Virus record (IMG/VR): IMGVR_UViG_3300028800_000001
Span: 186,001-250,000 of that record
Direction: 5' to 3' (one strand)
DNA: 64,000 bases
This document shows positions 12,753 to 29,270 of this stretch, piece by piece (the stretch's first letter is position 1; every line of letters begins with the position of its first letter). The position numbers and the translations under genes were made by a program. The notes beneath the pieces were generated by a model, which was not told where the DNA came from, ran no database searches, and saw only the letters and a program-made list of their open reading frames with translations.

Positions 12753-12805
12753 AGTATACCCTAATTCACACGTTACGTCAAATATTTCTTCTTTGCATTT
12801 TCAGA
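12753..12805 (-). promoter_or_regulatory. sigma70-type promoter with upstream box
   Basis: TTGACG-17-TATACT plus TCTGAAAA at conserved distance. Confidence 0.7.
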
Positions 12806-13489
12806 CTTGGCAAGTCCCAACGTCACTGTTCGAATGCCATATTGATTTTTACCTGTACCAAGCACTTTGAACTTTGACCCAGGCGGAATAAGAAATTCGT
12901 GTTCATCCTTTCCTTCGGAAATACTTTCCACATACAATCCTTTTGCGCCTTTGGGCACATGGATTACAAACTTCATTGTATCGCCAAAGGAGGATTCATC
13001 GTCGCTCGTGGTTGAAACAAAGGCTGGATCGGTAAAGCTTTTACCAACGTTGCGTTCGAGCTCTTGAAAGACCGACTTGGCCGTTGCTTCATCAGGAAGT
13101 TTAATGCCCCGTGACACCGAGAATGCGACAGGGGCTTCCCCTCTATTTAATCCCTCTGTCGCCGCTTTGATCATCTGAGCATATTTGGCAGGCAGCGCCG
13201 TCTTCTCACGCAGTGAGCGGTTAAACATATCGTAGAGACTACTGGTGTACTGCACGATAGCATTTTTTTGTTCGCGAGAAAGTCCCTTTGTCATCTTCTT
13301 ATAGAGACCGAGCAGATGCGTGTTGCGCTCTTCATCGCTTCCAGCAAGGCCACCGCTATCGCTTTCCTCTGCGCTTCCGTAATGTCCCGCAGATGCGGTT
13401 GCAAAACGACCATGATCATCATGATAGGGATCAGCCTTACTTGCTAAAAAGCGCGTAAGTTGTACCACGTCGCTCACGAAAGGAATCAT
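12773..13489 (-). CDS. ADP-ribosyltransferase, VIP2/C3-like (R-S-E class)
   Basis: YT...FNRSLR, VSRG, FVSTT, EHEFLIPPGSKF; N-terminal KADPYHDDHGRFAT tag. Confidence 0.85.
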   Translation of the reverse strand: MIPFVSDVVQLTRFLASKADPYHDDHGRFATASAGHYGSAEESDSGGLAGSDEERNTHLLGLYKKMTKGLSREQKNAIVQYTSSLYDMFNRSLREKTALPAKYAQMIKAATEGLNRGEAPVAFSVSRGIKLPDEATAKSVFQELERNVGKSFTDPAFVSTTSDDESSFGDTMKFVIHVPKGAKGLYVESISEGKDEHEFLIPPGSKFKVLGTGKNQYGIRTVTLGLAKSENAKKKYLT

Positions 13490-16368
13490 TTACGCACGCT
13501 CTCCTGAAATTCGCGATACTGTGTGCTCACCGAGACTGGTGGCCTGCGCTTTTTCTCTTCGCGTACTGCAAGCTCTTTCTCTGTGCGTTCCAAGAGCGCT
13601 TCCACGCGGTGAATAGCTTCCTTCTTCTCAGGGACAAAGACCTGAGAACAGCGGCAACGAATGATATTGCCAGCAGACGCCCCAATGGTCATATCCCCTG
13701 GATACATCAAATATTCGCCTCCCACCAGAAAGGGATCTTCATAGCGACGCAATTGTTGATCGGCCTGCGCATGTGCCAGTCTGGTATGTGCGTCATGCGT
13801 ACTAATCCAGACTTTTAAAAGTGGAATACCAACGGCTCCAGCCGTCTTATGTGCGCCATAGTTATAGGCAGTCGTCCACTCCGTTTGCGCAATCATTTCT
13901 GCTTTTTTGCCTAAGCGCTCACCAGAGAGGAAATTGCTCAAGCGTTCGCCAATAGCGCGGTTGTCTTCGCCTTGCGCAAGCCCTGTCTCAATTTCACGAG
14001 CAACCTCTTTTTTGAGGGTATCAAGCACCTGCGCGGTCGCCTGCTCACCATGCTTACGCCCATATTCAGCCGCAAGGCTTTGCCATGACGGCGGTGACCA
14101 TTTCTTTTTATAAGCAGCACTGGTAAGATTTTTATGCGTATCATTTACGCCCTGTGTTCCTGCTTGCTCTGAGCACAGCGAAAGACCATGCAGAATGACT
14201 TTCTTTGAGGTGTCCCAGACCGGCTCAAGATTATCAGTAATCGTATTCGGATCAGTGCCTACACGTGCAGTTGCAATCGCCTGCTGTGCGGTGACGTTTA
14301 ATGCGTGACGCACTGGCTCCACACCACGCGTACTCTCCAGGTTTTGCTGACTCTCTAGCACTGGTGTGCTCTTAATCTCTGTCACAATCACCCGACTCAT
14401 CGTCTCTTGCGCATCCGCGTCCTGCACATTTGACGTTCCTTGCTGTGTTGAGCCCTGTCCAGGTTTGGGTGTAGGAGAGGCCGAAGGATTTGGCCCAGGA
14501 CTAGGAGGTGCTGGCTGTTTTCCAGGCGGTAGTTGTGCAGGTTGTTGCCCAGGTGGTAACTGCCCACTACCATCGTCAGGCGGTGGTGGTCCTCCTGCTC
14601 CTGGTTGCGGTGGCCCTGCAAGCGTCTGCTTAAACATCGTCTCGACAAACTGGCCCATTGCCTCTTCAGGCACAAACGCTTTATTCATCGTCGTGATATT
14701 GAAGTAATCCCCACCATCAATTTCAGTGAGCCCAAGAAGATTGCGCACTTCGTTTAAGGTCACAACGCCTGCGCCCCACTGTGCCATGACGCGAGTATTG
14801 AGGCTATCACGGTCCTCTTGTAACGCCTCCACCTGATCTTTGTCATAGTCGAGCTCTAAGCGCTCATCAAACATTGGCACGAGCCAGACGTTGAGACGAT
14901 CCCTCAGTTTATCCATGAGGGGCAAAACCGTCTCCTGATAAAAGCTTTTACGTGCTTCCCCATAATTGGAGTTGTGGACACAGAGCCCTTGCGCAAAGAA
15001 GGTATGCGTCCCTTCTACTTCAATGTCATACACATCCACTTCAAGGAGCTCTTCAATCTTTTGCAGCTCCACCAGTGTCGTGCCAACCGGAATACTGGGA
15101 AATTCATCAGAATAGACGCATTCATGCCTGATTGTTTCTTTGAGCGGCCCATCACGAGCCACCAACAGATCGCCAACACGCAAGTCATCTAAGCGCACAA
15201 AATAGAGTCCATCAAAACGCTCTTTCTTCTGTTTATTTCTGCGCGCCATAAGAAAGGGGTGATTGGCCGTCGCCTCAACCGTAAACGATCCTGCCGTCAA
15301 ACGAAACGTCTTCTTCTTCCCTGTTTTCCACTGGCGTGTAATACGCCGCTTCACAATCGTATTGAAGGTCGGATCATAGGAGTAAACTTGAATACCAGGA
15401 GTGAGCATGCCGATAGGCAGTGGCCCATGCACCGTTTCAATGCGGCTCTCATAAGGGAGACAATAGGTTTTATTGGCATTGTCACCAAGCAGTTCAGACG
15501 GCACACCAAGAGCAATGGAGATATCACGCATATTTTGCTTGCGGCTCTCCTGCCAGTCCAATTCCATTGGCGACATAGAAAACTGTTTCCAGTCCAACCC
15601 ACCCTCTAGCAAGAGTGGTACACCTGCGTTCTTCTTGCCGGTATATTTCTCCCGAATCACTCTTCTCAAACGCTCAAATTGATCGTTGCCGAGTGTGCCA
15701 GAGGCAACAAGCGCACCAGAAGGTCTTCCTGCGTTCTGAAGTATAGCGGTGTTCCAGTCAAATCCTTCATTTTGCTGATCAATCAAGGCTGCGGCTACCG
15801 CGACGGGAGAAAGTCCGTACCAATCATTCGTTGCCGAGAACATCTTGAGATGCATAATATCTGGTGCATCATAGTATTGGCGATGACCATCAAGCGTATA
15901 TTCGTAGCCAGCGATAGTACCAATACCAGGAATGACACGCATACGGTCTGGTCGCATTGTCCAGAGCTCCATTGGCAGCGCACGCGGGTTAGGACGTACC
16001 GCGTACATATAGGCATTGCCCGAAAGTATCCAGTAGGAAATGATCTCTTCTAAAAAGGTGGCGGAACCATGACGGGGATTGGGTTGCATAAAAAGATCAA
16101 GGAGTGGGTGTTCTTCAATGACGCGTTTCTTATTGGTTTTCTGTGTCAGTTTCCAGGGGATGCCAGCACAACTTTGCGCGATCAAAGAGATAGCTTTATA
16201 CGTCGTAATATTTTTTTCATAGCCGAATGTTGCTAAATTCTTAAAATCGCGTGGCGTATAAATAGGTTGCCCAGGCGCAATGAATTGTGCGTACATCTGA
16301 TACGCTGGATCGTCCTTCTTTTCAGAACCACCCAGGCGCAAGAAGAACTTCTGGAGCGGATTTGCCAT
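13486..16368 (-). CDS. HK97-family portal protein with intein, fused to MuF (Mu gpF/SPP1 gp7) head morphogenesis domain
   Basis: GNAY, GLSPV, NAGxPLLLEGG, GVPSELLG, TLNEVR portal motifs; C-terminal KVWISTHDAHTRLAH...YPGD...CRC MuF motif. Confidence 0.9.
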   Translation of the reverse strand: MANPLQKFFLRLGGSEKKDDPAYQMYAQFIAPGQPIYTPRDFKNLATFGYEKNITTYKAISLIAQSCAGIPWKLTQKTNKKRVIEEHPLLDLFMQPNPRHGSATFLEEIISYWILSGNAYMYAVRPNPRALPMELWTMRPDRMRVIPGIGTIAGYEYTLDGHRQYYDAPDIMHLKMFSATNDWYGLSPVAVAAALIDQQNEGFDWNTAILQNAGRPSGALVASGTLGNDQFERLRRVIREKYTGKKNAGVPLLLEGGLDWKQFSMSPMELDWQESRKQNMRDISIALGVPSELLGDNANKTYCLPYESRIETVHGPLPIGMLTPGIQVYSYDPTFNTIVKRRITRQWKTGKKKTFRLTAGSFTVEATANHPFLMARRNKQKKERFDGLYFVRLDDLRVGDLLVARDGPLKETIRHECVYSDEFPSIPVGTTLVELQKIEELLEVDVYDIEVEGTHTFFAQGLCVHNSNYGEARKSFYQETVLPLMDKLRDRLNVWLVPMFDERLELDYDKDQVEALQEDRDSLNTRVMAQWGAGVVTLNEVRNLLGLTEIDGGDYFNITTMNKAFVPEEAMGQFVETMFKQTLAGPPQPGAGGPPPPDDGSGQLPPGQQPAQLPPGKQPAPPSPGPNPSASPTPKPGQGSTQQGTSNVQDADAQETMSRVIVTEIKSTPVLESQQNLESTRGVEPVRHALNVTAQQAIATARVGTDPNTITDNLEPVWDTSKKVILHGLSLCSEQAGTQGVNDTHKNLTSAAYKKKWSPPSWQSLAAEYGRKHGEQATAQVLDTLKKEVAREIETGLAQGEDNRAIGERLSNFLSGERLGKKAEMIAQTEWTTAYNYGAHKTAGAVGIPLLKVWISTHDAHTRLAHAQADQQLRRYEDPFLVGGEYLMYPGDMTIGASAGNIIRCRCSQVFVPEKKEAIHRVEALLERTEKELAVREEKKRRPPVSVSTQYREFQESVRK
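14971..15462 (-). mobile_element. mini-intein (164 aa, no endonuclease) in portal
   Basis: begins CLPYES, block B TANHPF, ends VYDIEV...CVHN followed by Ser. Confidence 0.9.
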
Positions 16369-16749: not shown

Positions 16750-18597
16750 TTACACATTCCCTACAATGAAATCATTCATAATTTGTGGCGTAGCGGTGTC
16801 AAAACCTACAACATCCAACGAGCCTGGATCGGCTGGATCGGCAATTGTGAATTCCGTCGCGGTCATTCCCATGACGATCAGCTTTGCATTGATACCGCTG
16901 TGCTGTCGATAATTGCGCAGCGCTTCCGAGGCGTGTATTTCACCGGCCCACGTCTCATTGTCGGTAAGCACAATAAAGGCATCCGCCTCAACATTGTTTT
17001 TCTGTGCCCAAATCATCGGCAATGAGCAATCAGTCCCACCAAACGGCATGCGATCAACAGCCGCAAGTGCATCGTCCAAACGCTGTTTTGGTGAAACAGG
17101 TAGTGGCACGAACTGATGACTAAACGCCATCATCGCATAATTGCTCTCCGTTGCAGCCGTGAGCAGCGCAAGCGCGGTGGAAGCCACTCGTGGAGTGAGC
17201 CCAATCACCTCTGCCAAGGTTCCACCGGTCATGGAACCTGAAACGTCTACCGCAAGCACCAAGCGCTTATTCGTTGGTGTGATGACCCCAAAGGAAAGAT
17301 GAAACGCGTCATGGAGCGCATCAACGATAGACTGCACAGGCGTCCAGGTAGCAGTGCTTCTCAAGCTGCGTCCGGCCTTGTAAGTGAGCATTGCGGCCAG
17401 GATTTTAATTGGGTGCAAGCGCGCTCCAACTAAGCGCTTCTGCTCATGCAAACGTTTGTTTACCAGCGCCGTTGCGCTGCTCGTTTGCGTCAGAATGCCC
17501 ACTCTGGTCATCGTCGCAAGGTTCTTCACCATCATTTCCGGCTGCGACTGCTCCAAGAGAATCTCCCAGACCGCTTTCGATTTGAGATATTGCGTTGGCA
17601 CTGCTTCACGTGGAAGTTTGTATGCCTCAATCAACTTCACGACTTCCGCTTCGCTATTGGCGCGCTTTGCCTGTTCGAAGGCACGCAAAATTGCGACCGG
17701 ATCATGATCAGAGGGAACCACTGACTCAATTTCCCCTTTCGCGATCCATTTGAGCGCTTCAGCACGCTCGCCAGAAGAATGTGGATGTGCTAAACGCACA
17801 ATATCTTGCTGACTCCAGCCATCGCGGCTCTGATACTTCACACTCTGGTACGCCAACTTCTCGACTGCCATGTCTTCGTACCACAAACGGCTGGATTTGC
17901 GCTGCGCACCACCACGGCCACGGAACTGCTCAATATAGGACTGAAAGTGCAGCCAATGTGTACCAATGCGCACCACTTTTCCAAGCTGGCTATACGCATA
18001 TTGGCGAACCTCAAGATCCTCTGGATGCAAAAGCTGAACGGTTTTCCCACTCTTCTTCACCTTGAGCTCAATCGTGTTTTCGTCCAGACGCGTCCAGGTA
18101 CGACTGCCATCTTTGGACGTAACGGTAAGCCCAACTTTCGGAAAACGTGTAAACTCTCTCTCGTGCTTCTCGTTTACGTGTTCGGTGTCATCCTCTGTGT
18201 AGCGATGCAACAGGTACACCATCTCAGCGGGAACCGTGTGCGCAACCGTTCCATGTACATCACAGGCGCAACAACGCGCAAGCGCAAACAGCGCAGGATC
18301 TTCTTTCGGAGCGCGCCCTGCCTGGGAAATCTCCACAATGGTGTCTACCACCTCTTTGCCACGACCAGCGCGTAGTAACGCCTCTAGTGTGTCCAGGTTG
18401 TCCTTCGTCAGCTTTTTCTTTCCAACATAATAGGTAGAGCTGCTACTGCCCAGGATCAAAAAACGCTTGAAGCGATCCAGATCGTCCAGCGTGTAACTAA
18501 ATCCACCCGCATTGTTTTTCTTCTGGTTGGAACCAGGGATCGGCTGGCTCTGTGGCGTCACCAAATTACGCGTGCCCACATTACGATAATTGCTCAT
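16750..18597 (-). CDS. rsr: Ro60 / TROVE-domain RNA-binding protein (Rsr)
   Basis: NNAGGF, RFLILG, KYQSRDGWS, NLATMTR, vWA MIDAS DVSGSM, GGTD, LTDNET, DVVGFD; GAGGAG RBS before ATG 18597. Confidence 0.95.
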   Translation of the reverse strand: MSNYRNVGTRNLVTPQSQPIPGSNQKKNNAGGFSYTLDDLDRFKRFLILGSSSSTYYVGKKKLTKDNLDTLEALLRAGRGKEVVDTIVEISQAGRAPKEDPALFALARCCACDVHGTVAHTVPAEMVYLLHRYTEDDTEHVNEKHEREFTRFPKVGLTVTSKDGSRTWTRLDENTIELKVKKSGKTVQLLHPEDLEVRQYAYSQLGKVVRIGTHWLHFQSYIEQFRGRGGAQRKSSRLWYEDMAVEKLAYQSVKYQSRDGWSQQDIVRLAHPHSSGERAEALKWIAKGEIESVVPSDHDPVAILRAFEQAKRANSEAEVVKLIEAYKLPREAVPTQYLKSKAVWEILLEQSQPEMMVKNLATMTRVGILTQTSSATALVNKRLHEQKRLVGARLHPIKILAAMLTYKAGRSLRSTATWTPVQSIVDALHDAFHLSFGVITPTNKRLVLAVDVSGSMTGGTLAEVIGLTPRVASTALALLTAATESNYAMMAFSHQFVPLPVSPKQRLDDALAAVDRMPFGGTDCSLPMIWAQKNNVEADAFIVLTDNETWAGEIHASEALRNYRQHSGINAKLIVMGMTATEFTIADPADPGSLDVVGFDTATPQIMNDFIVGNV

Positions 18598-18636: not shown

Positions 18637-18668
18637 AAAAAAAAACACGGGACAACAAAGGCCCGTGT
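18637..18668 (-). terminator. terminator hairpin between Y-RNA array and rsr
   Basis: ACACGGG/CCCGUGU stem then U9. Confidence 0.75.
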
Positions 18669-18677
18669 CTCAGGAAG

Positions 18678-18783
18678 GAACCGGACAAACACTGGAGAGG
18701 TGCTCACCCACATGAGCGCTACACCGCACAAAAAGCGGTGTACAAGAGTCGAACTTGAAAATCCTCACCAAACAGCCCGTTTC
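18678..18783 (-). ncRNA. Y RNA unit 5 (YrlA-like)
   Basis: GAAACGGGCUGU...GUUUGUCCGGUUC terminal stem; T-loop CAAG-UUCGACU-CUUG, capped acceptor-like hairpin, D-like arm. Confidence 0.75.
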
Positions 18784-18786
18784 GAA

Positions 18787-18848
18787 GCTCTGGACAAACA
18801 AGCGAAGAAGCATACAAAAGCGAGAACACTTCTTCAACAGCCCACAGC
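18787..18848 (-). ncRNA. Y RNA unit 4 (minimal, no tRNA domain)
   Basis: GCUGUGGGCUGU...GUUUGUCCAGAGC; shares GAAGAAGUGUUCUC/CUUCUUCG segment with units 1-2. Confidence 0.65.
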
Positions 18849-18851
18849 GAA

Positions 18852-18952
18852 GTCCCAGACAAAAGTTACTGAGCATTTTTCGTGCGCTCTAGCCGCTATG
18901 GGCTAGCCGCTTCCGTCTTCCAATAGAGTACACTCAATAGACAGCCTGCGAC
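18852..18952 (-). ncRNA. Y RNA unit 3 (non-tRNA cargo)
   Basis: GUCGCAGGCUGU...UUUUGUCUGGGAC terminal stem; internal CUAGCC/GGCUAG hairpin. Confidence 0.6.
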
Positions 18953-18955
18953 GAA

Positions 18956-19095
18956 GAAAGAGACAAACGAAACGAAGAAACTTATCTGAGCACTGCTCTA
19001 ACCTAGCTGAGCTACACAGCGGTTTCCCTCTGTGGTCGGATTTGAACCGACGACCGGCGCTTTAAAACGAGAACATTTCCTCCACAGCCTCTTTC
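18956..19095 (-). ncRNA. yrlA: YrlA-type Y RNA unit 2
   Basis: GAAAGAGGCUGU...GUUUGUCUCUUUC; T arm GUCGG-UUCAAAU-CCGAC before D arm GCUC..GAGC (permuted tRNA). Confidence 0.85.
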
Positions 19096-19098
19096 GAA

Positions 19099-19236
19099 GA
19101 GTGAGACAAACAAACGAAGAAACTCTTTTTGAAGACTGCCTGTACCATTCGGCTACATACACGGATACCCGTCTACGGCTGGACTCGAACCAACATGTCG
19201 TCTTTGGTTGAGAACATTTCCTCAACAGCCTCACTC
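19099..19236 (-). ncRNA. yrlA: YrlA-type Y RNA unit 1
   Basis: GAGUGAGGCUGU...GUUUGUCUCACUC; T arm GUUGG-UUCGAGU-CCAGC, capped acceptor, D arm GCC..GGC. Confidence 0.85.
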
Positions 19237-19245
19237 GATAGAGGA

Positions 19246-19300
19246 AGTATAGCACACCCTTTGCGATACGTCAAGCGTTTCTTCTATGAGTTTTCAGAAA
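19246..19300 (-). promoter_or_regulatory. promoter of Y-RNA array
   Basis: TTGACG-17-TATACT with extended TG; TTTCTGAAAA box upstream. Confidence 0.8.
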
Positions 19301-20434: not shown

Positions 20435-20508
20435 TGCAGAAGACGAGATTCGAACTCGCATTCTCCTACTTGGAAGGCAGGCACGATTGCCATTTACGCT
20501 ACTTCTGC
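20435..20508 (-). tRNA. tRNA-Gly(TCC)
   Basis: cloverleaf, anticodon loop CT-TCC-AA. Confidence 0.85.
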
Positions 20509-20750
20509 GTGCGTTTTCTCTGAATACACTGGAAAACAAACCCCTTAAAGATTGTTACCAAGTTATTCTCTTTGTCCGTAATGCGAACGGTACTTTCCGG
20601 CTCCATTGACTTGACGAACCATGCGTAAACTTGCAGTGCTTCACGTACAGTTTCAGCACGCGTTGAAGCCTGCGTCATCTCTTTGAGTTCGTCAAGTCGC
20701 TCAATCTCTTCTTCGAAGAAGTCAAATTGCACCCGTATCTTTGGTTTCAT
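20499..20750 (-). CDS. ribbon-helix-helix (CopG-like) protein
   Basis: RVQFDF...TRAETVREAL; paralogs at 25196-25671. Confidence 0.65.
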   Translation of the reverse strand: MKPKIRVQFDFFEEEIERLDELKEMTQASTRAETVREALQVYAWFVKSMEPESTVRITDKENNLVTIFKGFVFQCIQRKRTQK

Positions 20751-21272
20751 TGCCAATCCAACAACTCCAGATCAGGAATGCCGCGTGCCCACTCCATGAT
20801 CTTTTGCATCTTCTCTTCGTCTGGTAACCCGCATACATTCGGAAACACCACGAGATCGTGGCGAATAACACCCACTGTTTGCGGATGATAATACGAATAA
20901 CAACTCACCGGATAACCGGCTTCTAGTTCAAGACCGAGATGCTGGGCACGCTCAATCAAGTCGATCTGACGTAGTCCATCAATGATTGTCTGTTTGGTGA
21001 TGCGGATCATTCTTTCTCTCTGTCAAGCTTGTCAAAGATTACTGTTGACTGAATATACTCTTGTAAGAAATTCGACAAATCTTCGTTGGAAATCACGACA
21101 AGATCAACATCTTTTTGTAACGCCCTGGCAAGGTTCTCTTGACGCCCATACAGATCACTAAACGCCCTCCCACTCGGAAGCAATTCGCTTGGAAAGATCT
21201 GACGTACGCGCCCCTCTGCCAAAAGGAGTACATAGTAACCAGGGGCATCGCTGCGCTGTACACATCCACTCA

Positions 21273-21584
21273 TCATAGTTCACGCTCCAATGTTAACATG
21301 GCGGGTATCACCGACACATTTGAATTAAACTCATCACCACCAGTAGTCTTTTCACGAGACCACGTGACCCGCGCCCACGGTGGTTGCGCCTCTTGATATG
21401 CCTGCATCAAACGCAAGCCAAGCGCCTCACTGAAGTAACACTCACCCGTGATCACCTCTTCTAATTGCTTTCTGGTGAAACGGTAAAAAGGTTTGGTCTG
21501 ATTGCTTTCGATGTAGTCGTCAATGTACTCACAAATCTCATCGAACTGCATTTCTGTATACCCCTTTGGGGCTCCTCGTGGCAT
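21273..21584 (-). CDS. hypothetical protein, tandem paralog
   Basis: GAPKGYTEMQF..., similar to 21587-21898. Confidence 0.65.
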   Translation of the reverse strand: MPRGAPKGYTEMQFDEICEYIDDYIESNQTKPFYRFTRKQLEEVITGECYFSEALGLRLMQAYQEAQPPWARVTWSREKTTGGDEFNSNVSVIPAMLTLEREL

Positions 21585-21586
21585 CA

Positions 21587-21898
21587 CTAGTCCTCTCGTT
21601 CTAAACAAAGTGCAGCTTCGATTGTATGGCTGCGCGATATCGCGTCTTCACCGTATGTCGTTGTCTCTGGCCTCCAGTGCACACTTCCCCACTTCGGTTC
21701 TGCCTCTTGATACACCTGCATTAAACGCGTGATAAACGCTTTGCTTGCGAGAAAGTGCCCAGTGATCGCGCCATTCAGCTCGGAGACTTCAAAAATGTAC
21801 TCCTCTTGCGTCTGATTCTCCTCGATATAACGGTCAATATAATCAACCGCTTCCATGAATTGTTGTTCTGTATACCCACGCGGGGCTCCTGCGGCCAT
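21587..21898 (-). CDS. hypothetical protein, tandem paralog
   Basis: GAPRGYTEQQF... Confidence 0.65.
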   Translation of the reverse strand: MAAGAPRGYTEQQFMEAVDYIDRYIEENQTQEEYIFEVSELNGAITGHFLASKAFITRLMQVYQEAEPKWGSVHWRPETTTYGEDAISRSHTIEAALCLERED

Positions 21899-22173
21899 TA
21901 TACTTGCCCCTCTTTCTCTTGGCGATACGCATCCATCCGACTAAAATCAGGACAAATTTGCGCACCCTTTGGAATATGTGGCATACCAGTCGTCACCTTG
22001 CCGTCTACAATCTCAACATGAACGCACGTCGCAGAAAGGATACGGCGTAAGCGCTCGTACTCCACCATGTTACCAGCGTCAAGCGCGGCCTGTATCTCTG
22101 TGAGCAACAATTGACCCGCTTCTGAAAAGTCCATAATTTTCTCTTTTCTTTCTCTTTAAAACAACATTTTTAA

Positions 22174-22245
22174 TGGGACAGGTGAGGATCGAACTCACGA
22201 CCTAACGCTTAAAAGGCGCTTGCTCTACCGCTGAGCTACTACCCC
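22174..22245 (-). tRNA. tRNA-Lys(TTT)
   Basis: cloverleaf, CT-TTT-AA loop. Confidence 0.9.
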
Positions 22246-22341
22246 AAAATCGCCGGAAGATGAGTGTGAAAACAGAAATTTACATTCAGGAGTTCTCCAC
22301 CGAATACCCATTGGTGGAAAAACTCATCTTCTTTTGAGTAA

Positions 22342-22415
22342 TCTGGATGGCAGGATTTGAACCTGCGACCTCCTGATTCCAATTCAGGCACGCTACCGAG
22401 CTGCGCTACATCCAG
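22342..22415 (-). tRNA. tRNA-Pro(TGG)
   Basis: cloverleaf, AT-TGG-AA loop. Confidence 0.9.
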
Positions 22416-22831
22416 TCAGTTTTATCATAGGTAAGCTTTGCTACCCTTTTCACAATTCCATCAAAGAATCCGCGCTCCCTCTTTGGCAACATCTTTCCTG
22501 AAGCACGATCAATAGAGCTGCATTCTTCTGCAACACCTTCCTCCTCTACAAAGGCATCTCGTGGAAGACTGCCATAAAAAATATAGTCGCACATCCAACG
22601 ATGAAGTGTTCGTGTACTCTGGCGTTCTTTCGGTGTGGTCACTGCGAGAAGCATTACACCGTTGCCAGGACCACCAAGAAACTCAGGTTCCCAGACTTGA
22701 TTTTCTCTCAGGTAGTTTTCAATTGCATTCTGACGGCTATACCAAAGATCATTTATATCGTTTCTCCGAGCATAGCGCGCAAACGCTTTATAATCTTTGA
22801 GTAATTCCATTGCTTCTCGCAAATCTTTCAT
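22406..22831 (-). CDS. hypothetical protein
   Basis: 141-aa ORF in co-oriented run. Confidence 0.6.
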   Translation of the reverse strand: MKDLREAMELLKDYKAFARYARRNDINDLWYSRQNAIENYLRENQVWEPEFLGGPGNGVMLLAVTTPKERQSTRTLHRWMCDYIFYGSLPRDAFVEEEGVAEECSSIDRASGKMLPKRERGFFDGIVKRVAKLTYDKTDWM

Positions 22832-23368
22832 TTATTTCCATTCCCGCGCTTTTCTCTCTTCGTGTATCGCTGCGTAGATCATAAGCGTATCTTCAGGAAT
22901 TTCCAGCGCGCTTGCGAGTGCGTCCATATCACGGCTCACCCGATAACGCTCTAACGCGACTAGAAGATTGATTGCCATTGGCCCGACACTGGCGTCACTG
23001 ACCTTTCGCCTCTGGCGATAAAGATAGGTTGCCACTATATCGGCAAGAAATGCGTCCTCGCGTTCCATTGGTATCGTTACTAAATTATCCATCATTAGCA
23101 CTCCCGTATCGGTGATTTTGTATTCTTCTTTCTTGATGCAAACCAAATGAGCATAAATCCAACGCCGCTAGCGCACCCGAAGATGAGCCCAAAGAAAAAT
23201 CCAATGAGGAACGTTGCAAACATTACTTCTCCTTCCGCAACCTTGTGACGCCATCAATAATCGCATGAAATGCGCTGGCGTCTTTCTTCCACAGGTGCGA
23301 AAGATACATCCACATGGCGGCTGCGCCAACACTTATCCCTGAGAAAAAGCAAAGAAGCACTATAACAA

Positions 23369-23719
23369 TCATGATTGCTGTTCCTCAATCACCGTACTAT
23401 TGAGAACGGTCTGGCCGTTATATATTGCCGTTCCGTCTGCCTCGATTCTGAGATATCTCCCAACGACGGTACTTTGCACCGTATGTCCAAGCGGGGTATT
23501 TATAATTATTCTCTTGATAGTGTCTGGCACGTCGTGGATAGAAATCGTACGCTCTTGCGGCTCGTCCAGACTCTCTACCACCTCTGCCCCATCAAAGGTG
23601 ATATCTTCGCCCACAATGCGTAGCGAACCATCAGGACGACTAGAGGTCGTCACAAAACTGGTGTTCTTCGCAATCATTTCCTGTGCCCAGGTAGGAAGTG
23701 TTGATTTCAGTCTTTTCAT
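23369..23719 (-). CDS. hypothetical protein
   Basis: 116 aa, AAGGAG RBS. Confidence 0.6.
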   Translation of the reverse strand: MKRLKSTLPTWAQEMIAKNTSFVTTSSRPDGSLRIVGEDITFDGAEVVESLDEPQERTISIHDVPDTIKRIIINTPLGHTVQSTVVGRYLRIEADGTAIYNGQTVLNSTVIEEQQS

Positions 23720-23735
23720 GATTTCTCCTTTTTAA

Positions 23736-23828
23736 TGAGTGAGGGAAGGAATCGAACCTTCCACAATCTTCTTTAAAAGATATCCGGTTTACCGGTCGCC
23801 GGACCCATTTCCGTTCTGGCACCCACTC
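23736..23828 (-). tRNA. class II tRNA (Tyr-like) with expanded 11-nt anticodon loop
   Basis: acceptor, T arm and long variable arm intact; loop CGACCGGTAAA. Confidence 0.6.
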
Positions 23829-23897
23829 TTACCTAGTCAGTATACCGCAGTCCTCATCAAAAGACAAGCGTTTTTTCACGGTATTTTCTGAAGAAAT

Positions 23898-23990
23898 AGG
23901 ATCGTGCAGGAGTCGAACCTGCGCCTCTCGTACATCTACGAGCATACTCGCCGTCAGTGGATGTCTCCACCAGTCTTATACGAACGATCC
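23898..23990 (-). ncRNA. tRNA-like RNA with hairpin inserted in D loop and no canonical anticodon loop
   Basis: GGATCGT/ACGATCC acceptor, GCAGG-TTCGACT-CCTGC T arm, CTCGTA-GATG-TACGAG arm. Confidence 0.6.
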
Positions 23991-24938
23991 AAAAACTATG
24001 CCGCTTCCACCAGGATCAGATCACTATGAATAACCTGCTCCAGGCCACGGCTGATACTTACATGAATATTGTAGTATCCTTCAACCTCTGGCAGAGTGAT
24101 TGCGCCTTGAAAGTGTCCAGGGGCAATTTCACGAGGAGCTACAGAATCAACTATCGGCTTATTCTCAAGCGCTGTGTTGCCAGGAAGCTCTTGCTCCCAT
24201 ATCAATGAGACAGATGCATGTGTTCCTGTAACTACTTCGCCACGCGCTGTCTCCACCATAAAATCAAGTGGGAGGACGCTCCCAGGAAAATGACTATCAT
24301 CCAATTCAAAGTGTGCTAAAAACATGATACTTCTTTCTTTAGTATCTCCCCTCTGGAAGCTCTGGCCTATTCTTCTCGAACCACTCCTTTGCCTCGTACC
24401 ACTGGAACCTCATACGACTAAGCCCCTGTGTACATAGGTTCCAGATGTGATACTGCGTAAGTCTGCTAGCATCAATGCTGCCCCTGGCAATAAGCCCCTC
24501 TTCATCGGCAAGCTTTGCGCGAAGGGTCTGATCAATCCAGTCTTCTCGACTACTCATAATTATTCTTTCTCACTTCCCCATTCATCAAAGGACTCTCGTT
24601 AGTATCGTATTTCCTGCATTGCCAATCCTGGCAATGCAAATAGGAGTTTGCATACTCATCTGATACCCTCCACCCTTCCAGCCCTGAAACATCATTCCAT
24701 CACAGAAATAGGCTTTAGCAATCAGTTCCTCTACCGTTTGCGGCGTGGTATTCGGTCTTTTCTGGTTGTACCCAGAGAGATCAAAGCCCAGTGCCAATTG
24801 GTTGTAATCACCACGCCAACTGGCGAAGGCGGTTGGAAACGCCTCTTCAAAATCGAAGTGCACACGGTGCTTTCTGTCTGGCAGCAGTTCTAATGCCTAT
24901 ATCAGTTGTCCCAGGTTCATAATCAGCTCTTTCAATAA

Positions 24939-25012
24939 CACGAAAGGGGTGATTCGAACACTCATCTCACCGTTTTGGAGACGGTTGCTTTAGCCAATTA
25001 AGCTACTCTCGT
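24939..25012 (-). tRNA. tRNA-Trp(CCA)
   Basis: cloverleaf, CT-CCA-AA loop. Confidence 0.85.
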
Positions 25013-25195
25013 ATGAGCAAGGCTAGCGCACGCCATATTCGCGCTGCATAACAGTCCAGGCATCAGCAATTGAAAGTTTCTCACGCTGAATGCGGTATAA
25101 TTCACGCTGGACAGGGGTGAGCCGCTCGTATGCCTCTTGATCAGTCTTTGGTACCATTCTTTTCCTCCAAAAGTCTTTTCTCTTTTATTCTTCTC

Positions 25196-25432
25196 CTACA
25201 AGCGAAAGAAAAAATTCGCCTCTAAACGAAATACCAACTCGCCGTCTTCGCTGCGCACTTCCAAGATGCGCTTCTCATTGCTTTGTTCAAGTAACCATTC
25301 ATATGCGTGGAGCGCGGCCCGTAGCACCTCTGGCTTCGAGACATCCTTCTCTTCGCAGAGTGTTTCCAGACGCGCAAACTGACGATCAGAAAAATCAAGC
25401 TGGACGCGTTGACGTTTTTCATCGTTAGGCAT
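25196..25432 (-). CDS. ribbon-helix-helix protein
   Basis: RVQLDF...SKPEVLRAAL. Confidence 0.65.
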   Translation of the reverse strand: MPNDEKRQRVQLDFSDRQFARLETLCEEKDVSKPEVLRAALHAYEWLLEQSNEKRILEVRSEDGELVFRLEANFFFRL

Positions 25433-25671
25433 TATGATTTCCTTCGCAGAAGATGAAAGAGCGTTGCAACTTCTGTTTGGTACACCAGTTCACCGCTCTT
25501 TTCATGAAGTTCGAATGTGCGCTCTCGATTTTTTGCTAGCCACGCGTACATACGCACTGCTGCGCGTACAAATTCCGGCTTTGTCATTTCTACCTCTTGA
25601 GACAAGGCATCAAACGCTTCAAAGGAAGCAAACACTTGATCAATCTCTTTGATAATTTGTTCTTCGTTCAT
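25432..25671 (-). CDS. RHH-like paralog
   Basis: TKPEFVRAAVRMYAWL similar to neighbour. Confidence 0.55.
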   Translation of the reverse strand: MNEEQIIKEIDQVFASFEAFDALSQEVEMTKPEFVRAAVRMYAWLAKNRERTFELHEKSGELVYQTEVATLFHLLRRKS

Positions 25672-25680
25672 ACCAGTCCC

Positions 25681-25863
25681 TTAGCGTTTCACGTATGCGT
25701 TGATTCCTATAAGCACATTCGTGCCTTCAACCTGCTGGTTACCAGAGGTCGTAGCAACACTAATTGATTTGCCAGTGGCGGTAAGACCACCGCGCTGCGT
25801 GAGATCAATGACGATAGTAAGTTTTTTCTTGTCGTCCGAGACAGTCATTTCGACATTTTTCAT
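25681..25863 (-). CDS. small beta-rich protein
   Basis: MKNVEM...GKSISVATTSGN, strong RBS. Confidence 0.65.
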   Translation of the reverse strand: MKNVEMTVSDDKKKLTIVIDLTQRGGLTATGKSISVATTSGNQQVEGTNVLIGINAYVKR

Positions 25864-25893
25864 TATTTTTTCTCCTTTACAACTATTTTAAAA

Positions 25894-26003
25894 AGTTGTG
25901 CGCAGAGGGATTCGAACCTTCAAGACTTTTCCTGCAACCCCAAGCAGAAAAGCCGTCTGACACATGTCAATATCAGCGTTTCACCAATAACGGTACACAC
26001 AAC
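25894..26003 (-). ncRNA. non-canonical tRNA with ~10-bp acceptor stem and very long variable arm
   Basis: GTTGTGTGTA/TGCGCACAAC, T arm TTCGAAT, ~11-bp extra arm, 8-nt anticodon loop. Confidence 0.55.
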
Positions 26004-26005
26004 AA

Positions 26006-26076
26006 TTCTCCTACCTCGATTCGAACGAGGAACACTTGGTTCAAAGCCAAGCAAGTTACCGTTACTCCATAGGAGA
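26006..26076 (-). tRNA. tRNA-Gln(TTG)
   Basis: cloverleaf, CT-TTG-AA loop. Confidence 0.9.
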
Positions 26077-26080
26077 TCGA

Positions 26081-26150
26081 TAGAGCGTAGCGGGATCGAA
26101 CCGCTCGTACAGGACTACACCTGCCACATCACCAAGATGTGTCACGCCCT
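26081..26150 (-). ncRNA. atypical tRNA-like RNA (6-bp D stem, 6-nt anticodon loop)
   Basis: AGGGCGT/ACGCTCT, AGCGG-TTCGATC-CCGCT, GCAGG-TGTAGT-CCTGT. Confidence 0.55.
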
Positions 26151-26243
26151 CTTGGAACACTCTCCTCGCGACCTTGAGTGCCCATCCACACAATCTGTGA
26201 GTCAGGAGACCGGCGATCAACCCGATATACCCTTTCTCACTTG

Positions 26244-26318
26244 TGGTGCCAGCGGGTAGGATTGAACTACCGACACCGAGCTCTTCACGCTCGTGCTCTA
26301 CCACTGAGCTACACTGGC
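26244..26318 (-). tRNA. tRNA-Phe(GAA)
   Basis: cloverleaf, GT-GAA-GA loop, encoded CCA. Confidence 0.92.
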
Positions 26319-26320
26319 AT

Positions 26321-26472
26321 ACGCGCATGCTGAAGAGTCGAACTTCAGACTTCCCTGCGAAAGAGATCAGGTAGCTACTACTGACGTTTTCCCTCTTTTG
26401 AGCACGCTAGCAACACTTCAAAAGCTGGACTCTTCGCAAAAGCGTGCTTGAGCCACAAACACCCCCGCGCAT
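26321..26472 (-). ncRNA. ~150-nt tRNA-like RNA with large insert
   Basis: T arm CTGAAG-TTCGACT-CTTCAG; AGCACGCT/AGCGTGCT helix. Confidence 0.4.
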
Positions 26473-26477
26473 GATTT

Positions 26478-26930
26478 CTAGTTATTGGCCTCTATAATAG
26501 CGCTCAAACGAGCGCGCTGCTCTGCATCTAGTCGTCCCATCCACTCCACCGTAATTACGCACATATCCTCAAAGCTAAGCTCAATATCGTGAGGCGTTAC
26601 GCCATCAGGGCAATAGCGAAGTACTGTCTTTTCAGGAAGCGCAGTAAAATCCATCGCAAGTTCAGTATTAATCCCAATATTATTGGGATCACCACCAAAG
26701 AGCACATGGTACACTTCTGGCGAAAGCCCCTGAAGGACAAATCCACCCCTGTCATCATCATCGAGATAATATTCATCGTTGATCAAGTCCAGATGATAAT
26801 TGGCTTCCTGCAATCGTCCGAAGACGAGACCGCTCGTAAGAAAGTACACCTCGCCTGAAATGCGGCGACCATCACTGGTATAGACGTACCGCGTCTCTTT
26901 GCGTTCTAACTGATCTTCCATTCTACACAT
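26478..26930 (-). CDS. hypothetical protein
   Basis: ~150-aa ORF in co-oriented run. Confidence 0.55.
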   Translation of the reverse strand: MCRMEDQLERKETRYVYTSDGRRISGEVYFLTSGLVFGRLQEANYHLDLINDEYYLDDDDRGGFVLQGLSPEVYHVLFGGDPNNIGINTELAMDFTALPEKTVLRYCPDGVTPHDIELSFEDMCVITVEWMGRLDAEQRARLSAIIEANN

Positions 26931-27763
26931 CCTTCTTTAAACAAGGGATCAACGTGTACGAGAGAAGTCCCTTTTCCGCAACGCTACAGAGGATCAACTG
27001 ACGCATTGTTTCGCTGAGTCCACGTCCACCCTCGACAGGAAGCACACCGGCATCAATGAGCACCTGCTCTGTACTTCCAAAGAGCCGATGATTATGATCT
27101 TTGCAAAGCTCTAAAAGCTCATAGATGGCAATTGCATCTTTGCGCGCAAACAAACTTTCCAGCACTAAGCGACTTGACATGACTGCGACCATCGGTACCT
27201 GTGTGCCATTGGTCAGCGTTGCCATTTCTATTTCTTCTGTCATAGATATTTTTCTCTTTTCATTTCTTGTTCAAATGCTTCCTCGCGCCTCTCCATACTT
27301 CTATAGCTGCAACTCATATGGTGGTGACAGACGCCGCAAAGATAGAGCGCCGTGTACAGATCTTGCGGTGCATACTTTCCATCAATAAAAGTATAGTCCT
27401 TTTTGTCGCGAATAAGAGCACAAGAGTCACCCTTTTCGCCGCACTCATCGCAGAGATAATGCAACGATAGACTTGGAAGACTGATAAACTGTTCTTGCGT
27501 AAGATTAGTAATCATTCTTCGCCTCCTATTCTTGCATTGATTCGAAATCAGCACGATCACTAGCCGCCCATCCCTGTTCTACATCGGTCTCTGCTTTCCA
27601 ATAGAAATCCTCCCAGGAAAAGCCTTCGCCAGTACTAGAACGAGCACCAATCTTTTTCGCAATCACGTGAATTTTCTCTTCCATTTGTTCAGGTGAAGAA
27701 TGGTGCTCACGAAATTCAATAGTTATTTTCATATACTCCCTCCATATATACCAAGTAATTATA

Positions 27764-27896
27764 TCCAGCTAGAGCGATTCGAACACTCTCCTGCTCCCCT
27801 GTTCGCCTGACTCTCACCAGCCCTGGAGGACCATCCCCAAAGAGGCGAGACAAAAGGCTACTAAGGGGTGCTATGCACGCCATACATCGTAGCTGA
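27764..27896 (-). ncRNA. tRNA scaffold with ~60-nt hairpin replacing anticodon loop
   Basis: TCAGCTA/TAGCTGG acceptor, D arm, CCCCT/AGGGG stem enclosing long hairpin, T arm TTCGAAT. Confidence 0.6.
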
Positions 27897-27926
27897 TCAA
27901 AATATCCTATATCGATATAGGATAAA

Positions 27927-27998
27927 TACCTCATGTGAGACTCGAACTCACGATCTGCTCATTGAGAATGAGCTGTCCTGCCGCTAGACGAATGAGGC
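27927..27998 (-). tRNA. tRNA-Glu(CTC)
   Basis: cloverleaf, TT-CTC-AA loop. Confidence 0.88.
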
Positions 27999-28010
27999 AA
28001 ATGGTGCCAA

Positions 28011-28096
28011 TTTCCAGAGGCAGAGTCGAACTGCCCTGAACCATTATTGCGACTGTACGGCCCCAACTCCGATGGTTGGCTCTCGAAGCTCTGGAA
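28011..28096 (-). ncRNA. tRNA scaffold with 27-nt anticodon insert and reduced D arm
   Basis: TTCCAGA/TCTGGAA, AACCAT/ATGGTT, GGCAG-TTCGACT-CTGCC. Confidence 0.55.
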
Positions 28097-28368
28097 AAGT
28101 GTGCCGTTTCTTGCAACGCGACCATCAGAGGTAGGCACACGCATCGTTCTGCTCTCCGTAGTGTTTTGTGTGCTTACGGATAAACCCACAGACAAGTTGG
28201 CTGCGCTCGACATTCGAAGCACGTGCGATACGCTCTCAATGAAGATGGGCGAAGAGCGGATCATTGGGTACTTGCCAATCCCAATACTGGCAAGCGCAAC
28301 CTTTTTTGTGATGGCGACACGAATGCACGCGTCATTAAACCTGCGTTTCCAGTGCTGGGTACCATCAA

Positions 28369-28442
28369 TACGGGTGGCGAGAATTGAACTCGGCTATTTC
28401 CTGTTTGAAGGACAGGCGGCTCGACCGTTTGCCTTCACCCGC
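28369..28442 (-). tRNA. tRNA-Glu(TTC) (C33 variant)
   Basis: cloverleaf, CC-TTC-AA loop. Confidence 0.75.
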
Positions 28443-28446
28443 AGGT

Positions 28447-28514
28447 TGCGAACAGAACGGAGTCACACCGTCATCTTCCTCTTACAAGGTGCTCTGTTCT
28501 TGAGCTATGTTCGC
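28447..28514 (-). tRNA. degenerate tRNA
   Basis: GCGAACA/TGTTCGC, GCTC..GAGC D arm, short anticodon arm, TGTGACT T loop. Confidence 0.45.
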
Positions 28515-28546
28515 GGTGTACCCGCATCTTCATGCTTCGACACCAG

Positions 28547-28617
28547 GAGACGAATGTAGGAGTTGCACCTACACGGGAGGTCATGACGCTCCTCGTAACC
28601 CTGCCGGTTCCTCGTCC
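28547..28617 (-). tRNA. degenerate tRNA (CAT anticodon?)
   Basis: GGACGAG/TTCGTCT, T arm TGCAACT, GT-CAT-GA. Confidence 0.4.
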
Positions 28618-29056: not shown

Positions 29057-29061
29057 AGATA

Positions 29062-29259: not shown

Positions 29260-29270
29260 GCAAGAAACAA

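What the first reader, a model, noticed from the sequence alone, without database searches (positions are those of the whole stretch)
18637..19274. Polycistronic array of five modular Y RNAs upstream of phage Ro60: constant handle, variable cargo
Seen: one promoter (19246-19274) precedes five units at 19099-19236, 18956-19095, 18852-18952, 18787-18848 and 18678-18783. Each is closed by a 9-bp terminal stem ending in an invariant GGC/GUC, followed by a UGU/UUU internal loop. Outer stem sequences differ but pairing is kept (covariation), and units are separated by exactly 3 nt (UUC). Cargo differs: two full permuted tRNA domains (YrlA topology: T arm, capped acceptor, D arm), one reduced tRNA domain, one non-tRNA hairpin cargo and one with none. 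Known: bacterial Rsr uses Y RNAs as tethers to effectors such as PNPase, usually with only one or two Y RNA genes. Inference: a precursor processed into a repertoire of Y RNAs that redirect one Ro60 to several partners or act as decoys.
Basis: partly seen in the sequence, partly recalled or inferred. Interest (0 to 1): 0.9.

Follow-up and report, generated by a model that had tools for sequence, protein, structure and literature searches.

The report
Five Y RNAs before phage Ro60
A giant phage carries, just upstream of its Ro60 gene, one promoter-to-terminator block of five head-to-tail small RNAs that share the same Ro60-type stem but carry different tRNA-like or hairpin inserts; this is a real and conserved Y RNA array, but such arrays prove common near Ro60 genes, so it extends a known system rather than founding a new one.

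Summary
On the minus strand, a sigma-70-type promoter (19274-19246) precedes five abutting units (19236-18678) joined by exact UUC linkers. A hairpin with nine U residues follows, 39 nt before the ATG of a Ro60 gene with TROVE and vWA domains. Every unit closes with a 9-bp terminal stem ending GGC/GUC; 42 of 45 stem cells pair, and there are compensatory changes.

Related Ro60 loci carry the same architecture: terminal stem, asymmetric internal loop, second stem, GUUAUC-like motif, then a variable insert. Covariation across them is strong (about 90% of cells paired, against about 40% in slid controls). Covariance models built from relatives recover all five window units. All 88 and 148 model hits lie on the Ro60 strand.

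U1, U2 and U5 carry permuted tRNA-like domains (T arm, capped acceptor-like stem, D arm). U3 has only a D-arm-like hairpin, and U4 has no insert.

These are divergent Y RNAs. The loop reads GCUG where the published motif has GCCGAA, and none reaches Rfam's YrlA threshold. Arrays of 4-6 units occur in about a fifth of the Ro60 loci surveyed, so the premise of "only one or two" is too narrow.

Processing at the linkers, Ro60 binding and redirection to partners remain untested inferences.

The parts
19246..19274 (-). Sigma-70-type promoter of the array (TTGACG, 17 nt, TG-TATACT). The predicted start lies 0-3 nt before unit 1.
   Evidence: 10 of 12 matches, TG extension; sequence. A similarly placed promoter ends 8 nt before the first unit of the related array in L010.
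19099..19236 (-). U1: Y RNA with a full permuted tRNA-like domain (spacer, T arm, capped acceptor-like stem, D arm).
   Evidence: Model R2 79.4 bits (in its training set). Rfam YrlA 19.1 bits, E 0.33. Own fold closes the terminal stem, z -3.0. Aligned with 17 relatives, with compensatory changes in the T, acceptor-like and D stems.
18956..19095 (-). U2: Y RNA with a full permuted tRNA-like domain.
   Evidence: R2 95.3 bits (in its training set). Rfam YrlA 30.7 bits, E 1.5e-4, below the gathering score of 69. Fold.
18852..18952 (-). U3: Y RNA handle with a hairpin insert that resembles only a D arm. Its motif is GUACUC.
   Evidence: R2 21.5 bits, E 0.0016 in the window and 0.013 in 1.1 Mb; not in the training set. 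Terminal stem kept in its own fold.
18787..18848 (-). U4: minimal Y RNA (62 nt), handle only.
   Evidence: R1 57.7 bits, E 2e-12 (in R1's training set). R2 31.7 bits, E 6.7e-6 (not in R2's training set). Ten relatives of 63-69 nt in other loci show 14 of 18 pairs with compensatory changes.
18678..18783 (-). U5: Y RNA with T arm, 7-8 bp capped acceptor-like stem and D-arm-like hairpin, but no spacer arm. Its motif is AUUUUC.
   Evidence: R2 24.8 bits, E 2.7e-4; not in the training set; the alignment places the T, acceptor-like and D elements. Own fold z -3.6. L015 266-378 has the same AUCAAGUUCGACUCUUG start.
18784..19098 (-). Four UUC linkers at 19098-19096, 18955-18953, 18851-18849 and 18786-18784. 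Each lies between a unit-final C and a unit-initial G.
18637..18670 (-). Intrinsic terminator: a hairpin of about 9 bp followed by nine U residues, between the array and the Ro60 gene.
   Evidence: Sequence. The hairpin is formed in the fold of the whole transcript. The simple scan missed it because its loop is longer than 8 nt.
16750..18597 (-). Ro60/Rsr gene (615 aa). The ribosome-binding site AAGAGGAG is at 18609-18602 and the ATG at 18597. Only 39 nt separate it from the terminator's U run, so it has no room for a promoter of its own.

Best explanation
The block 19274-18637 (minus strand) is a single transcription unit that encodes five Y RNAs for the phage's own Ro60.

Shown:
- One promoter, five abutting structured units and one terminator lie directly upstream of the Ro60 gene.
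- All units share a conserved handle: a terminal stem closed by G.Y and C-G pairs, a 4 x 6-9 nt internal loop with invariant UG on the 5' side and UU on the 3' side, a second stem, and a GUUAUC-like motif.
- The same architecture is seen in Rfam's YrlA consensus. Covariation supports it in dozens of Ro60 loci, always on the Ro60 strand.
- The apical inserts differ from unit to unit.

Inferred:
- The handle is the Ro60-binding module, so all five RNAs load onto the same protein.
- The primary transcript is cut in or next to the 3-nt linkers and trimmed back to the stems that Ro60 protects. In relatives, embedded tRNAs would add RNase P and RNase Z cuts.
- The three tRNA-like inserts, the hairpin insert and the insert-less unit give Ro60 particles different partners, or simply gate the Ro60 cavity. 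This follows what is known for Yrn1 and YrlA with PNPase.
- Ro60 mRNA arises by read-through of the terminator, which would keep Y RNAs in excess over the protein.
For: - Anatomy.
- Ro60 identity.
- Conserved two-stem handle: 89.8% of cells paired against 38-42% for slid partners, and 14 of 18 pairs compensatory, in 11 minimal units from 9 sources. In 84 distinct model hits, 91.3% against 35-42% (this alignment is fitted to the model).
- tRNA-like inserts: RNAalifold recovers the terminal, T, acceptor-like and D stems, with 17 of 21 pairs compensatory.
- U3, U4 and U5 are found by a model trained without them.
- Strand and position: all 88 R1 hits and all 148 R2 hits lie on the Ro60 strand. 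The strict scan gives 122 same-strand hits against 2 opposite-strand hits in 545 kb.
- Arrays of 4-5 units in the closest relatives L007, L010, L011, L013, L014, L016 and L029.
- True tRNAs sit inside such arrays.
- A minimal unit of a relative passes Rfam's threshold for nematode stem-bulge RNAs, which the literature treats as Y RNA homologues (PMC4726728).
- Published precedent for co-transcribed, processed Y RNAs and for modularity: PMC4201824, 10.1101/312249, PMC12135203.
Against: - There are no RNA-level data, so the ends, the processing and even the expression are unshown.
- No unit reaches Rfam's YrlA gathering score (30.7 and 19.1 bits against 69).
- The loop reads GGCUGUNG rather than the published GNCGAAN0-1G.
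- U3 and U5 have degenerate apical motifs and modest model scores.
- Stem 2 is nearly identical in U1, U2 and U4. Within the window, those three therefore add no independent covariation.
- A 3-nt linker is short for the known single-strand endonucleases.
- The host is unknown.
- The model E-values are rough.
Confidence: 0.7

Rival explanations
1. The array is not cut into separate RNAs. The intact transcript of about 600 nt acts as a multivalent scaffold or sponge that binds up to five Ro60 rings. Alternatively it is a cis-acting leader: Ro60 occupancy of the handles tunes termination at 18670-18637 and so regulates Ro60's own synthesis.
For: - The Ro60 gene has no promoter of its own and starts 39 nt after the terminator, so its expression must pass through the array.
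- The linkers are only 3 nt here and 0-12 nt in relatives.
- Thermus phage Ro60 forms higher-order complexes with its Y-like RNAs (PMC12135203).
Against: - In all three bacteria studied, Y RNAs accumulate as discrete processed species from polycistronic precursors (PMC4201824).
- tRNA genes embedded in related arrays imply cleavage by tRNA-processing enzymes.
- Each unit folds on its own.
Confidence: 0.15
2. The tRNA-like units act mainly on their own as tRNA mimics, for example as decoys for host tRNA-cleaving defence nucleases or for tRNA-modifying enzymes. In this reading Ro60 is only a stabiliser.
For: - U1, U2 and U5 keep the T-loop and D-loop consensus.
- Units of related arrays carry different D-arm types. 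Some look like class II tRNAs, one with a long extra arm before the T arm (read by eye and compared from memory).
- The phage carries 11 tRNA genes nearby.
- Relatives place RNA-repair genes beside Ro60: Rnl1 plus PNKP, or RlaP.
- YrlA is a substrate of tRNA enzymes (PMC4201824).
Against: - The units lack an anticodon loop and a free CCA end, which are the usual targets of anticodon nucleases.
- U3 and U4 have no tRNA-like domain, yet their classes are conserved across loci.
- The invariant handle argues for a common protein partner.
Confidence: 0.1
3. The units are decayed or rearranged tRNA genes, or chance repeats, with no link to Ro60.
For: Rfam's tRNA model gives a weak hybrid hit across the D arm of U1 and the T arm of U2 (18.9 bits). 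A tRNA cluster lies 1.2 kb upstream.
Against: - ARAGORN and Rfam call no tRNA in the array.
- The order T, acceptor-like, D is permuted.
- The non-tRNA handle is conserved with covariation across loci and is tied to Ro60 in strand and position.
- The junction pattern is never seen in shuffles.
Confidence: 0.02

Closest known systems
YrlA (Rfam RF02553), the tRNA-like Y RNA of Salmonella Typhimurium, Mycobacterium smegmatis and mycobacteriophages
   Same: - Encoded just upstream of Ro60/Rsr on the same strand.
- A long stem formed by the 5' and 3' ends, an asymmetric internal loop (5 x 8 in the Rfam consensus, 4 x 6-9 here) and a second stem of about 7 bp.
- Then T arm, capped acceptor-like stem and D arm, as in U1, U2 and U5.
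   Different: - The loop reads GGCUGUNG rather than GNCGAAN0-1G.
- Scores are 30.7 and 19.1 bits against a gathering score of 69.
- None of the units in 16 related loci reaches that threshold.
- There are three such units per locus here, not one.
YrlB of Salmonella and M. smegmatis, and Yrn2 of Deinococcus radiodurans: second Y RNAs processed from one precursor, in Deinococcus together with tRNA-Asp
   Same: - Several Y RNAs are co-transcribed upstream of Ro60.
- Some lack the full tRNA-like domain.
- A tRNA can sit inside the precursor; relatives L007, L010, L013 and L017 have one.
   Different: - Five units rather than two.
- Uniform 3-nt linkers.
- A shared, sequence-conserved handle.
- The insert-less class (U4) is conserved across many loci, whereas YrlB had no detectable homologues outside Salmonella (PMC4201824).
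Yrl1 and Yrl2 of Thermus phage phiLo with its Ro60
   Same: Phage-encoded Y-like RNAs lie upstream of a phage Ro60. Binding to the Ro60 and to host PNPase has been shown in vitro (PMC12135203).
   Different: Two RNAs with a CGAA motif. Here there are five units with a UG loop. No biochemical data exist for this phage.
Metazoan Y RNAs and nematode stem-bulge RNAs (Rfam RF00019, RF01656)
   Same: A stem, an internal loop or bulge, a second stem and an apical loop. A minimal unit of relative L014 scores 40.6 bits on RF01656, whose gathering score is 38.
   Different: The window's own units give no hit to either family at E up to 10. Metazoan Y RNAs are separate polymerase III genes, not arrays.

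Membership tests
Y RNA (RNA partner of Ro60, as a functional class) | Encoded next to a Ro60/TROVE gene on the same strand | tested here: met
   The array ends 39 nt before the Ro60 ATG. In relatives, every model hit lies on the Ro60 strand.
Y RNA (RNA partner of Ro60, as a functional class) | Long stem formed by the 5' and 3' ends that holds a conserved internal loop or helix, the Ro60 site | tested here: met
   Both stems have compensatory changes. GC(U/C)G, GUUAUC and UUG are invariant or nearly so.
Y RNA (RNA partner of Ro60, as a functional class) | Binds Ro60 and depends on it for stable accumulation | not testable with these tools
   Needs EMSA, pull-down or Northern blots with and without Ro60.
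YrlA (Rfam RF02553) | Score at or above the curated gathering threshold (69 bits) | tested here: not met
   U2 30.7 bits, U1 19.1 bits, and no hit for U3-U5.
YrlA (Rfam RF02553) | Permuted tRNA-like domain in the order T arm, capped acceptor-like stem, D arm | tested here: met
   Met for U1, U2 and U5. Not met for U3 (D-arm-like hairpin only) or U4 (no insert).
YrlA (Rfam RF02553) | GNCGAAN0-1G motif in the Ro60-binding stem (PMC4201824) | tested here: not met
   The window units read GGCUGU(U/G/C)(G/U) at the equivalent place. Cellular-type relatives read GGGCCG(A)AG.
tRNA genes | Cloverleaf with an open acceptor stem and an anticodon arm, called by ARAGORN or by Rfam's tRNA model | tested here: not met
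   No call inside 18678-19236. Only a sub-threshold hybrid hit across two units.

The most novel reading that the evidence does not exclude
Phages and many environmental bacteria keep a conserved repertoire of Y RNA classes in one array. The classes are several tRNA mimics of different tRNA types, a hairpin class and an insert-less class. In this reading a single Ro60 is programmed combinatorially, with each insert recruiting a different enzyme or decoying a different tRNA-directed defence, and the array is a programmable adaptor set rather than redundant copies.
Probability: 0.2. Interest if true: 0.75.

Novelty: new variant of a known kind. Interest (0 to 1): 0.5.

Why it matters
Work on bacterial Y RNAs rests on a few species with one or two RNAs per Ro60. 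Here, and in about a fifth of the Ro60 loci surveyed, Ro60 is preceded by four to six Y RNAs that share one handle and differ in their inserts. Standard annotation misses all of them, because none reaches Rfam's threshold.

This gives three things:
- a better sequence and structure definition of the Ro60-binding module;
- conserved non-tRNA Y RNA classes that earlier homology searches could not find;
- a compact phage operon, under 2.7 kb with promoter, five RNAs, terminator and Ro60, in which the idea of one Ro60 with several adaptors can be tested directly.

It does not establish a new kind of system.

Tried and rejected
- Megablast of the locus against 50,697 phage records found no match. 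The phage has no sequenced close relative. The window is part of the IMG/VR contig IMGVR_UViG_3300028800_000001, 327 kb.
- A search of viral contigs with the window's own handle pattern found only the source contig.
- The exact hexamers GGCTG...TTGTC, scanned in the first relatives, found almost nothing. The handle had to be generalised to GC(T/C)G, GTTATC and TTGYC.
- Model R1, built from minimal units, cannot span units with inserts, even with the filters off. Model R2 was built for those.
- A scan of genome contigs with GGGCTG-N8-10-GGGTTATC was too loose. It gave 120 loci, and almost none carries a real unit. It gives no inference about the host.
- Weak model hits elsewhere in the window were rejected. 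62014-62091(-) lies antisense inside a GmrSD-like ORF. 2845-2913(+) and 56030-56097(+) are plain hairpins in the wrong register. 26264-26367(-) is the dimeric-tRNA artefact that Chen et al. describe.
- The ORFs that overlap the array (85 aa and 68 aa on the minus strand) were not treated as genes. They cut across structured, covarying units.
- The review by Sim et al. 2020 (PMC10870794) and the supplementary tables of Chen et al. 2014 could not be read. A prior listing of multi-copy loci therefore cannot be excluded.
- Four literature searches found no description of arrays of 4-6 Y RNAs.

Full report
**What is in the sequence**

Everything lies on the minus strand. A promoter-like site (TTGACG, 17 nt, TATACT, with a TG extension) occupies 19274-19246. 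From 19236 to 18678 there are five units of 138, 140, 101, 62 and 106 nt. Each pair of neighbours is joined by exactly UUC. The composite junction pattern TTTGTC-N6-TTCG-N5-GGCTGT matches four times in the window and never in 100 shuffles.

After U5 comes a hairpin followed by nine U residues (18670-18637). It forms in the fold of the whole transcript. A ribosome-binding site and the ATG (18597) of a 615-aa protein follow. That protein is Ro60:
- Pfam TROVE 3.6e-29 and vWA_Ro60 1.3e-64;
- D. radiodurans Rsr (2nvo) 1.5e-112;
- a chain deposited as RNA-binding protein RO60 (9nen) 7.3e-111, and Ro60 entry 1yvp.

Only 39 nt separate the U run from the ATG, and no promoter-like site lies between them. 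Ro60 must therefore be transcribed through the array.

**The units**

Each unit begins with six variable bases followed by GGC-UGU, and ends with UUU-GUC followed by the complement of those six bases. Across the five units, 42 of 45 stem cells form standard pairs (93.3%, against 33-53% when partners are slid). Five of the nine pairs change on both sides. The last three pairs (G-C, G.U, C-G) never vary. Position 4 is a mismatch in U3, U4 and U5.

Folded alone, every unit closes this stem in its minimum-free-energy structure, with z-scores from -1.45 to -3.8.

Inside the terminal stem lie three more features:
- an asymmetric internal loop, 4 nt on the 5' side and 6-9 nt ending in UUU on the 3' side;
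- a second stem of 6-8 bp;
- a short motif, GUUCUC in U1, U2 and U4, GUACUC in U3 and AUUUUC in U5.

**Relatives**

The window is part of a 327-kb IMG/VR contig. It has no close relative among deposited phages. The nearest Ro60 proteins in the large protein collection are about 55% identical.

I fetched their loci and 80 further Ro60 loci from metagenomes. Read by eye, the non-coding DNA upstream of Ro60 in L007, L010 and L011 is again an array of abutting units. They have the same layout and a slightly different handle: (A/G)GCUG, then GGUUAUC 9-10 nt later, and (C)UUGCC before the closing strand.

A regular-expression scan for this layout finds:
- 5 units in L007 and L011;
- 4 to 6 units in L013 and L014;
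- 4 units in L010, L016 and L029.

**Structure tests**

Eleven insert-less units of 62-69 nt from nine sources, including U4, align cleanly. On the two-stem structure, 89.8% of cells pair against 38-42% for slid partners. Fourteen of 18 pairs change on both sides, and no shuffle out of 500 reaches the observed values.

Eighteen units with tRNA-like inserts, including U1 and U2, align as well. RNAalifold independently recovers the terminal stem, a T arm, a capped stem and a D arm, with 17 of 21 pairs showing compensatory changes.

I built two covariance models from these alignments, R1 and R2. R2 was trained on U1 and U2 together with 16 units from relatives. It recovers all five window units end to end:

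| Unit | Bits | E-value in the window | In R2's training set |
|---|---|---|---|
| U2 | 95.3 | 1.2e-20 | yes |
| U1 | 79.4 | 5.7e-17 | yes |
| U4 | 31.7 | 6.7e-6 | no |
| U5 | 24.8 | 2.7e-4 | no |
| U3 | 21.5 | 1.6e-3 | no |

(All.)

Its alignments show that U5 has a T arm, a capped stem of 7-8 bp and a D-arm-like hairpin, but no spacer arm. U3 keeps only a D-arm-like hairpin, and U4 has nothing.

Across 0.55 Mb of Ro60 loci, all 88 R1 hits and all 148 R2 hits lie on the Ro60 strand, most of them just upstream of the gene. On the 84 distinct R1 hits the two stems are 91.3% paired, against 35-42% for slid partners. All 18 pairs show compensatory changes. That alignment is fitted to the model, so it leans towards the structure.

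**What family this is**

Rfam's YrlA model gives only sub-threshold hits to U2 (30.7 bits) and U1 (19.1 bits), against a gathering score of 69. No unit in 16 array-bearing loci reaches that threshold.

The YrlA consensus printed nevertheless has the same plan: a closing stem, a 5 x 8 loop, a 7-bp stem, then T, capped stem and D. Cellular-type loci in my set read GGGCCG(A)AG ... GGGUUAUC ... CUUGCC. That matches the published GNCGAAN0-1G motif (PMC4201824). The window and its nearest relatives read GCUG where those loci read GCCG.

These are therefore Y RNAs of a divergent branch. They work like YrlA and its partners but fall outside the curated family.

One minimal unit of a relative (L014 3410-3475) even passes Rfam's threshold for a nematode sRNA family (RF01656; 40.6 bits against 38). 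That family belongs to the stem-bulge RNAs, which are described as Y RNA homologues (PMC4726728). The window's own units do not hit that family.

**How unusual the array is**

A strict scan requires GC(U/C)G, the motif at the right distance, UUGYY, and at least 6 of 8 further stem pairs. It gives 122 hits on the Ro60 strand and 2 on the opposite strand.

Among the 58 loci with at least 1 kb upstream of Ro60:
- 13 have three or more units;
- 11 have four or more;
- the maximum is six.

These counts are lower bounds. The scan sees only three of the window's five units.

True tRNA genes are embedded in several arrays on the same strand:
- tRNA-Gln after the first unit in L007 and L010;
- tRNA-Phe before the first unit in L013;
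- a tRNA-like gene in L017.

This recalls the Yrn2-tRNA-Asp-Yrn1 precursor of Deinococcus (PMC4201824). Linkers in relatives vary from 0 to about 12 nt. The uniform UUC is private to this phage.

**Mechanism**

Shown:
- one promoter-to-terminator block;
- a shared, covarying handle tied to Ro60 in position and strand;
- inserts of differing kinds.

From established knowledge:
- Y RNAs are modular, with the Ro60 site in the terminal stem and an effector-binding apical part.
- They tether Ro60 to PNPase or block its cavity.
- YrlA and YrlB of M. smegmatis are processed from one precursor.
- YrlA is a tRNA mimic without an anticodon loop or a free CCA end.

Inferred:
- All five RNAs bind the phage Ro60 through the handle.
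- The transcript is cut at or near the linkers and trimmed to the protected stems.
- The inserts give the particles different partners.
- The terminator sets an excess of Y RNA over Ro60 mRNA.

Context in relatives points to RNA repair and turnover. Rnl1 ligase plus PNKP follow Ro60 in L007, and RlaP lies beside Ro60 in three loci. The window has no such neighbour. Ro60 there sits between a portal gene and small ORFs that lead to a cluster of 11 tRNAs.

**Rivals**

- An uncut multivalent scaffold or autoregulatory leader is not excluded (confidence 0.15).
- Ro60-independent tRNA decoys are possible for U1, U2 and U5, but this does not explain the conserved handle or U3 and U4 (0.1).
- Decayed tRNA genes or chance repeats are contradicted by the comparative data (0.02).

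**Novelty and limits**

In four full-text searches I found no paper that describes arrays of four to six Y RNAs or the insert-less conserved class. However, the main review and the supplementary tables of the 2014 survey were not readable, and that survey did report every YrlA-like hit within 4 kb of Ro60.

I file this as a new variant of a known kind: a divergent Y RNA branch in an expanded array.

Caveats:
- There are no expression data.
- The host is unknown.
- The model E-values are rough.
- Some alignments are fitted to the models.
- The class II tRNA likeness of some relatives' D arms was judged by eye against remembered tRNA features and was not tested.

Noticed in passing
window 18637-18670 (-): The arms of the terminator hairpin (AGACACGGG / CCCGUGU, with UUGUC just before the 3' arm) resemble the terminal stem of the conserved last unit in related arrays (GACACGGGCUG ... 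UUGCCCGUGUC in L014, L011 and L007). In L011 that last unit is itself followed by a U run. The terminator may be a collapsed sixth unit.
   Followed up: partly
window 16750-18597 (-), about residues 117-193 of the protein: This Ro60 and its nearest relatives carry an insertion of about 75 aa after a CCACDVHG segment, with conserved Cys and His positions. It is absent from cellular Ro60 proteins and is not covered by the matches to solved structures. It may be a metal-binding insert.
   Followed up: partly
L007 2519-2592, L010 3437-3509, L013 365-439, L017 2914-2987: True tRNA genes (Gln-UUG twice, Phe-GAA, and one with an odd anticodon loop) sit inside or at the head of Y RNA arrays on the same strand. 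tRNA processing would therefore cut these precursors.
   Followed up: partly
L007 2350-2509, L011 2510-2654; also L007 2653-2795, L010 3654-3798, L016 401-556, L029 315-457: Units within one array carry different D-arm types. Some look like class II tRNAs (Leu/Ser type), and two have a long extra arm just before the T arm, as if different tRNA identities were mimicked. This was judged by eye only.
   Followed up: no
L014 3410-3475: A 66-nt insert-less unit passes Rfam's gathering score for the nematode sRNA family ceN72-3_ceN74-2 (40.6 bits against 38), which is a stem-bulge RNA family.
   Followed up: partly
L007 5989-8018; L213 9670-10611; L214 1-718: In relatives, RNA-repair genes flank Ro60: Rnl1-type ligase plus PNKP, or RlaP nucleotidyltransferase. 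The window has none next to its Ro60.
   Followed up: partly
window 13486-16368 (-): The 960-aa portal protein carries an intein splicing domain and a C-terminal Mu F-like domain.
   Followed up: no
window 12773-13489 (-): A 238-aa protein just after the portal gene matches ADP-ribosyltransferase families (ADPrib_exo_Tox 3.3e-21, ART 2.5e-10). By position it could be a head-packaged enzyme that modifies host proteins.
   Followed up: no
window 20435-29344 (-): A cluster of 11 tRNA genes lies here. Two are unusually long calls (Val, 93 nt, at 23898-23990; Pro, 83 nt, at 26081-26163). A T-arm-like element lies just upstream of tRNA-Phe and gives a dimeric-tRNA type hit to the Y RNA model (26264-26367).
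   Followed up: no
window 56903-63285 (+): Two proteins with GmrSD N-terminal domains flank a C-5 cytosine DNA methylase. A ParA-like ATPase and a LAGLIDADG protein lie at 37036-38786 (-).
   Followed up: no
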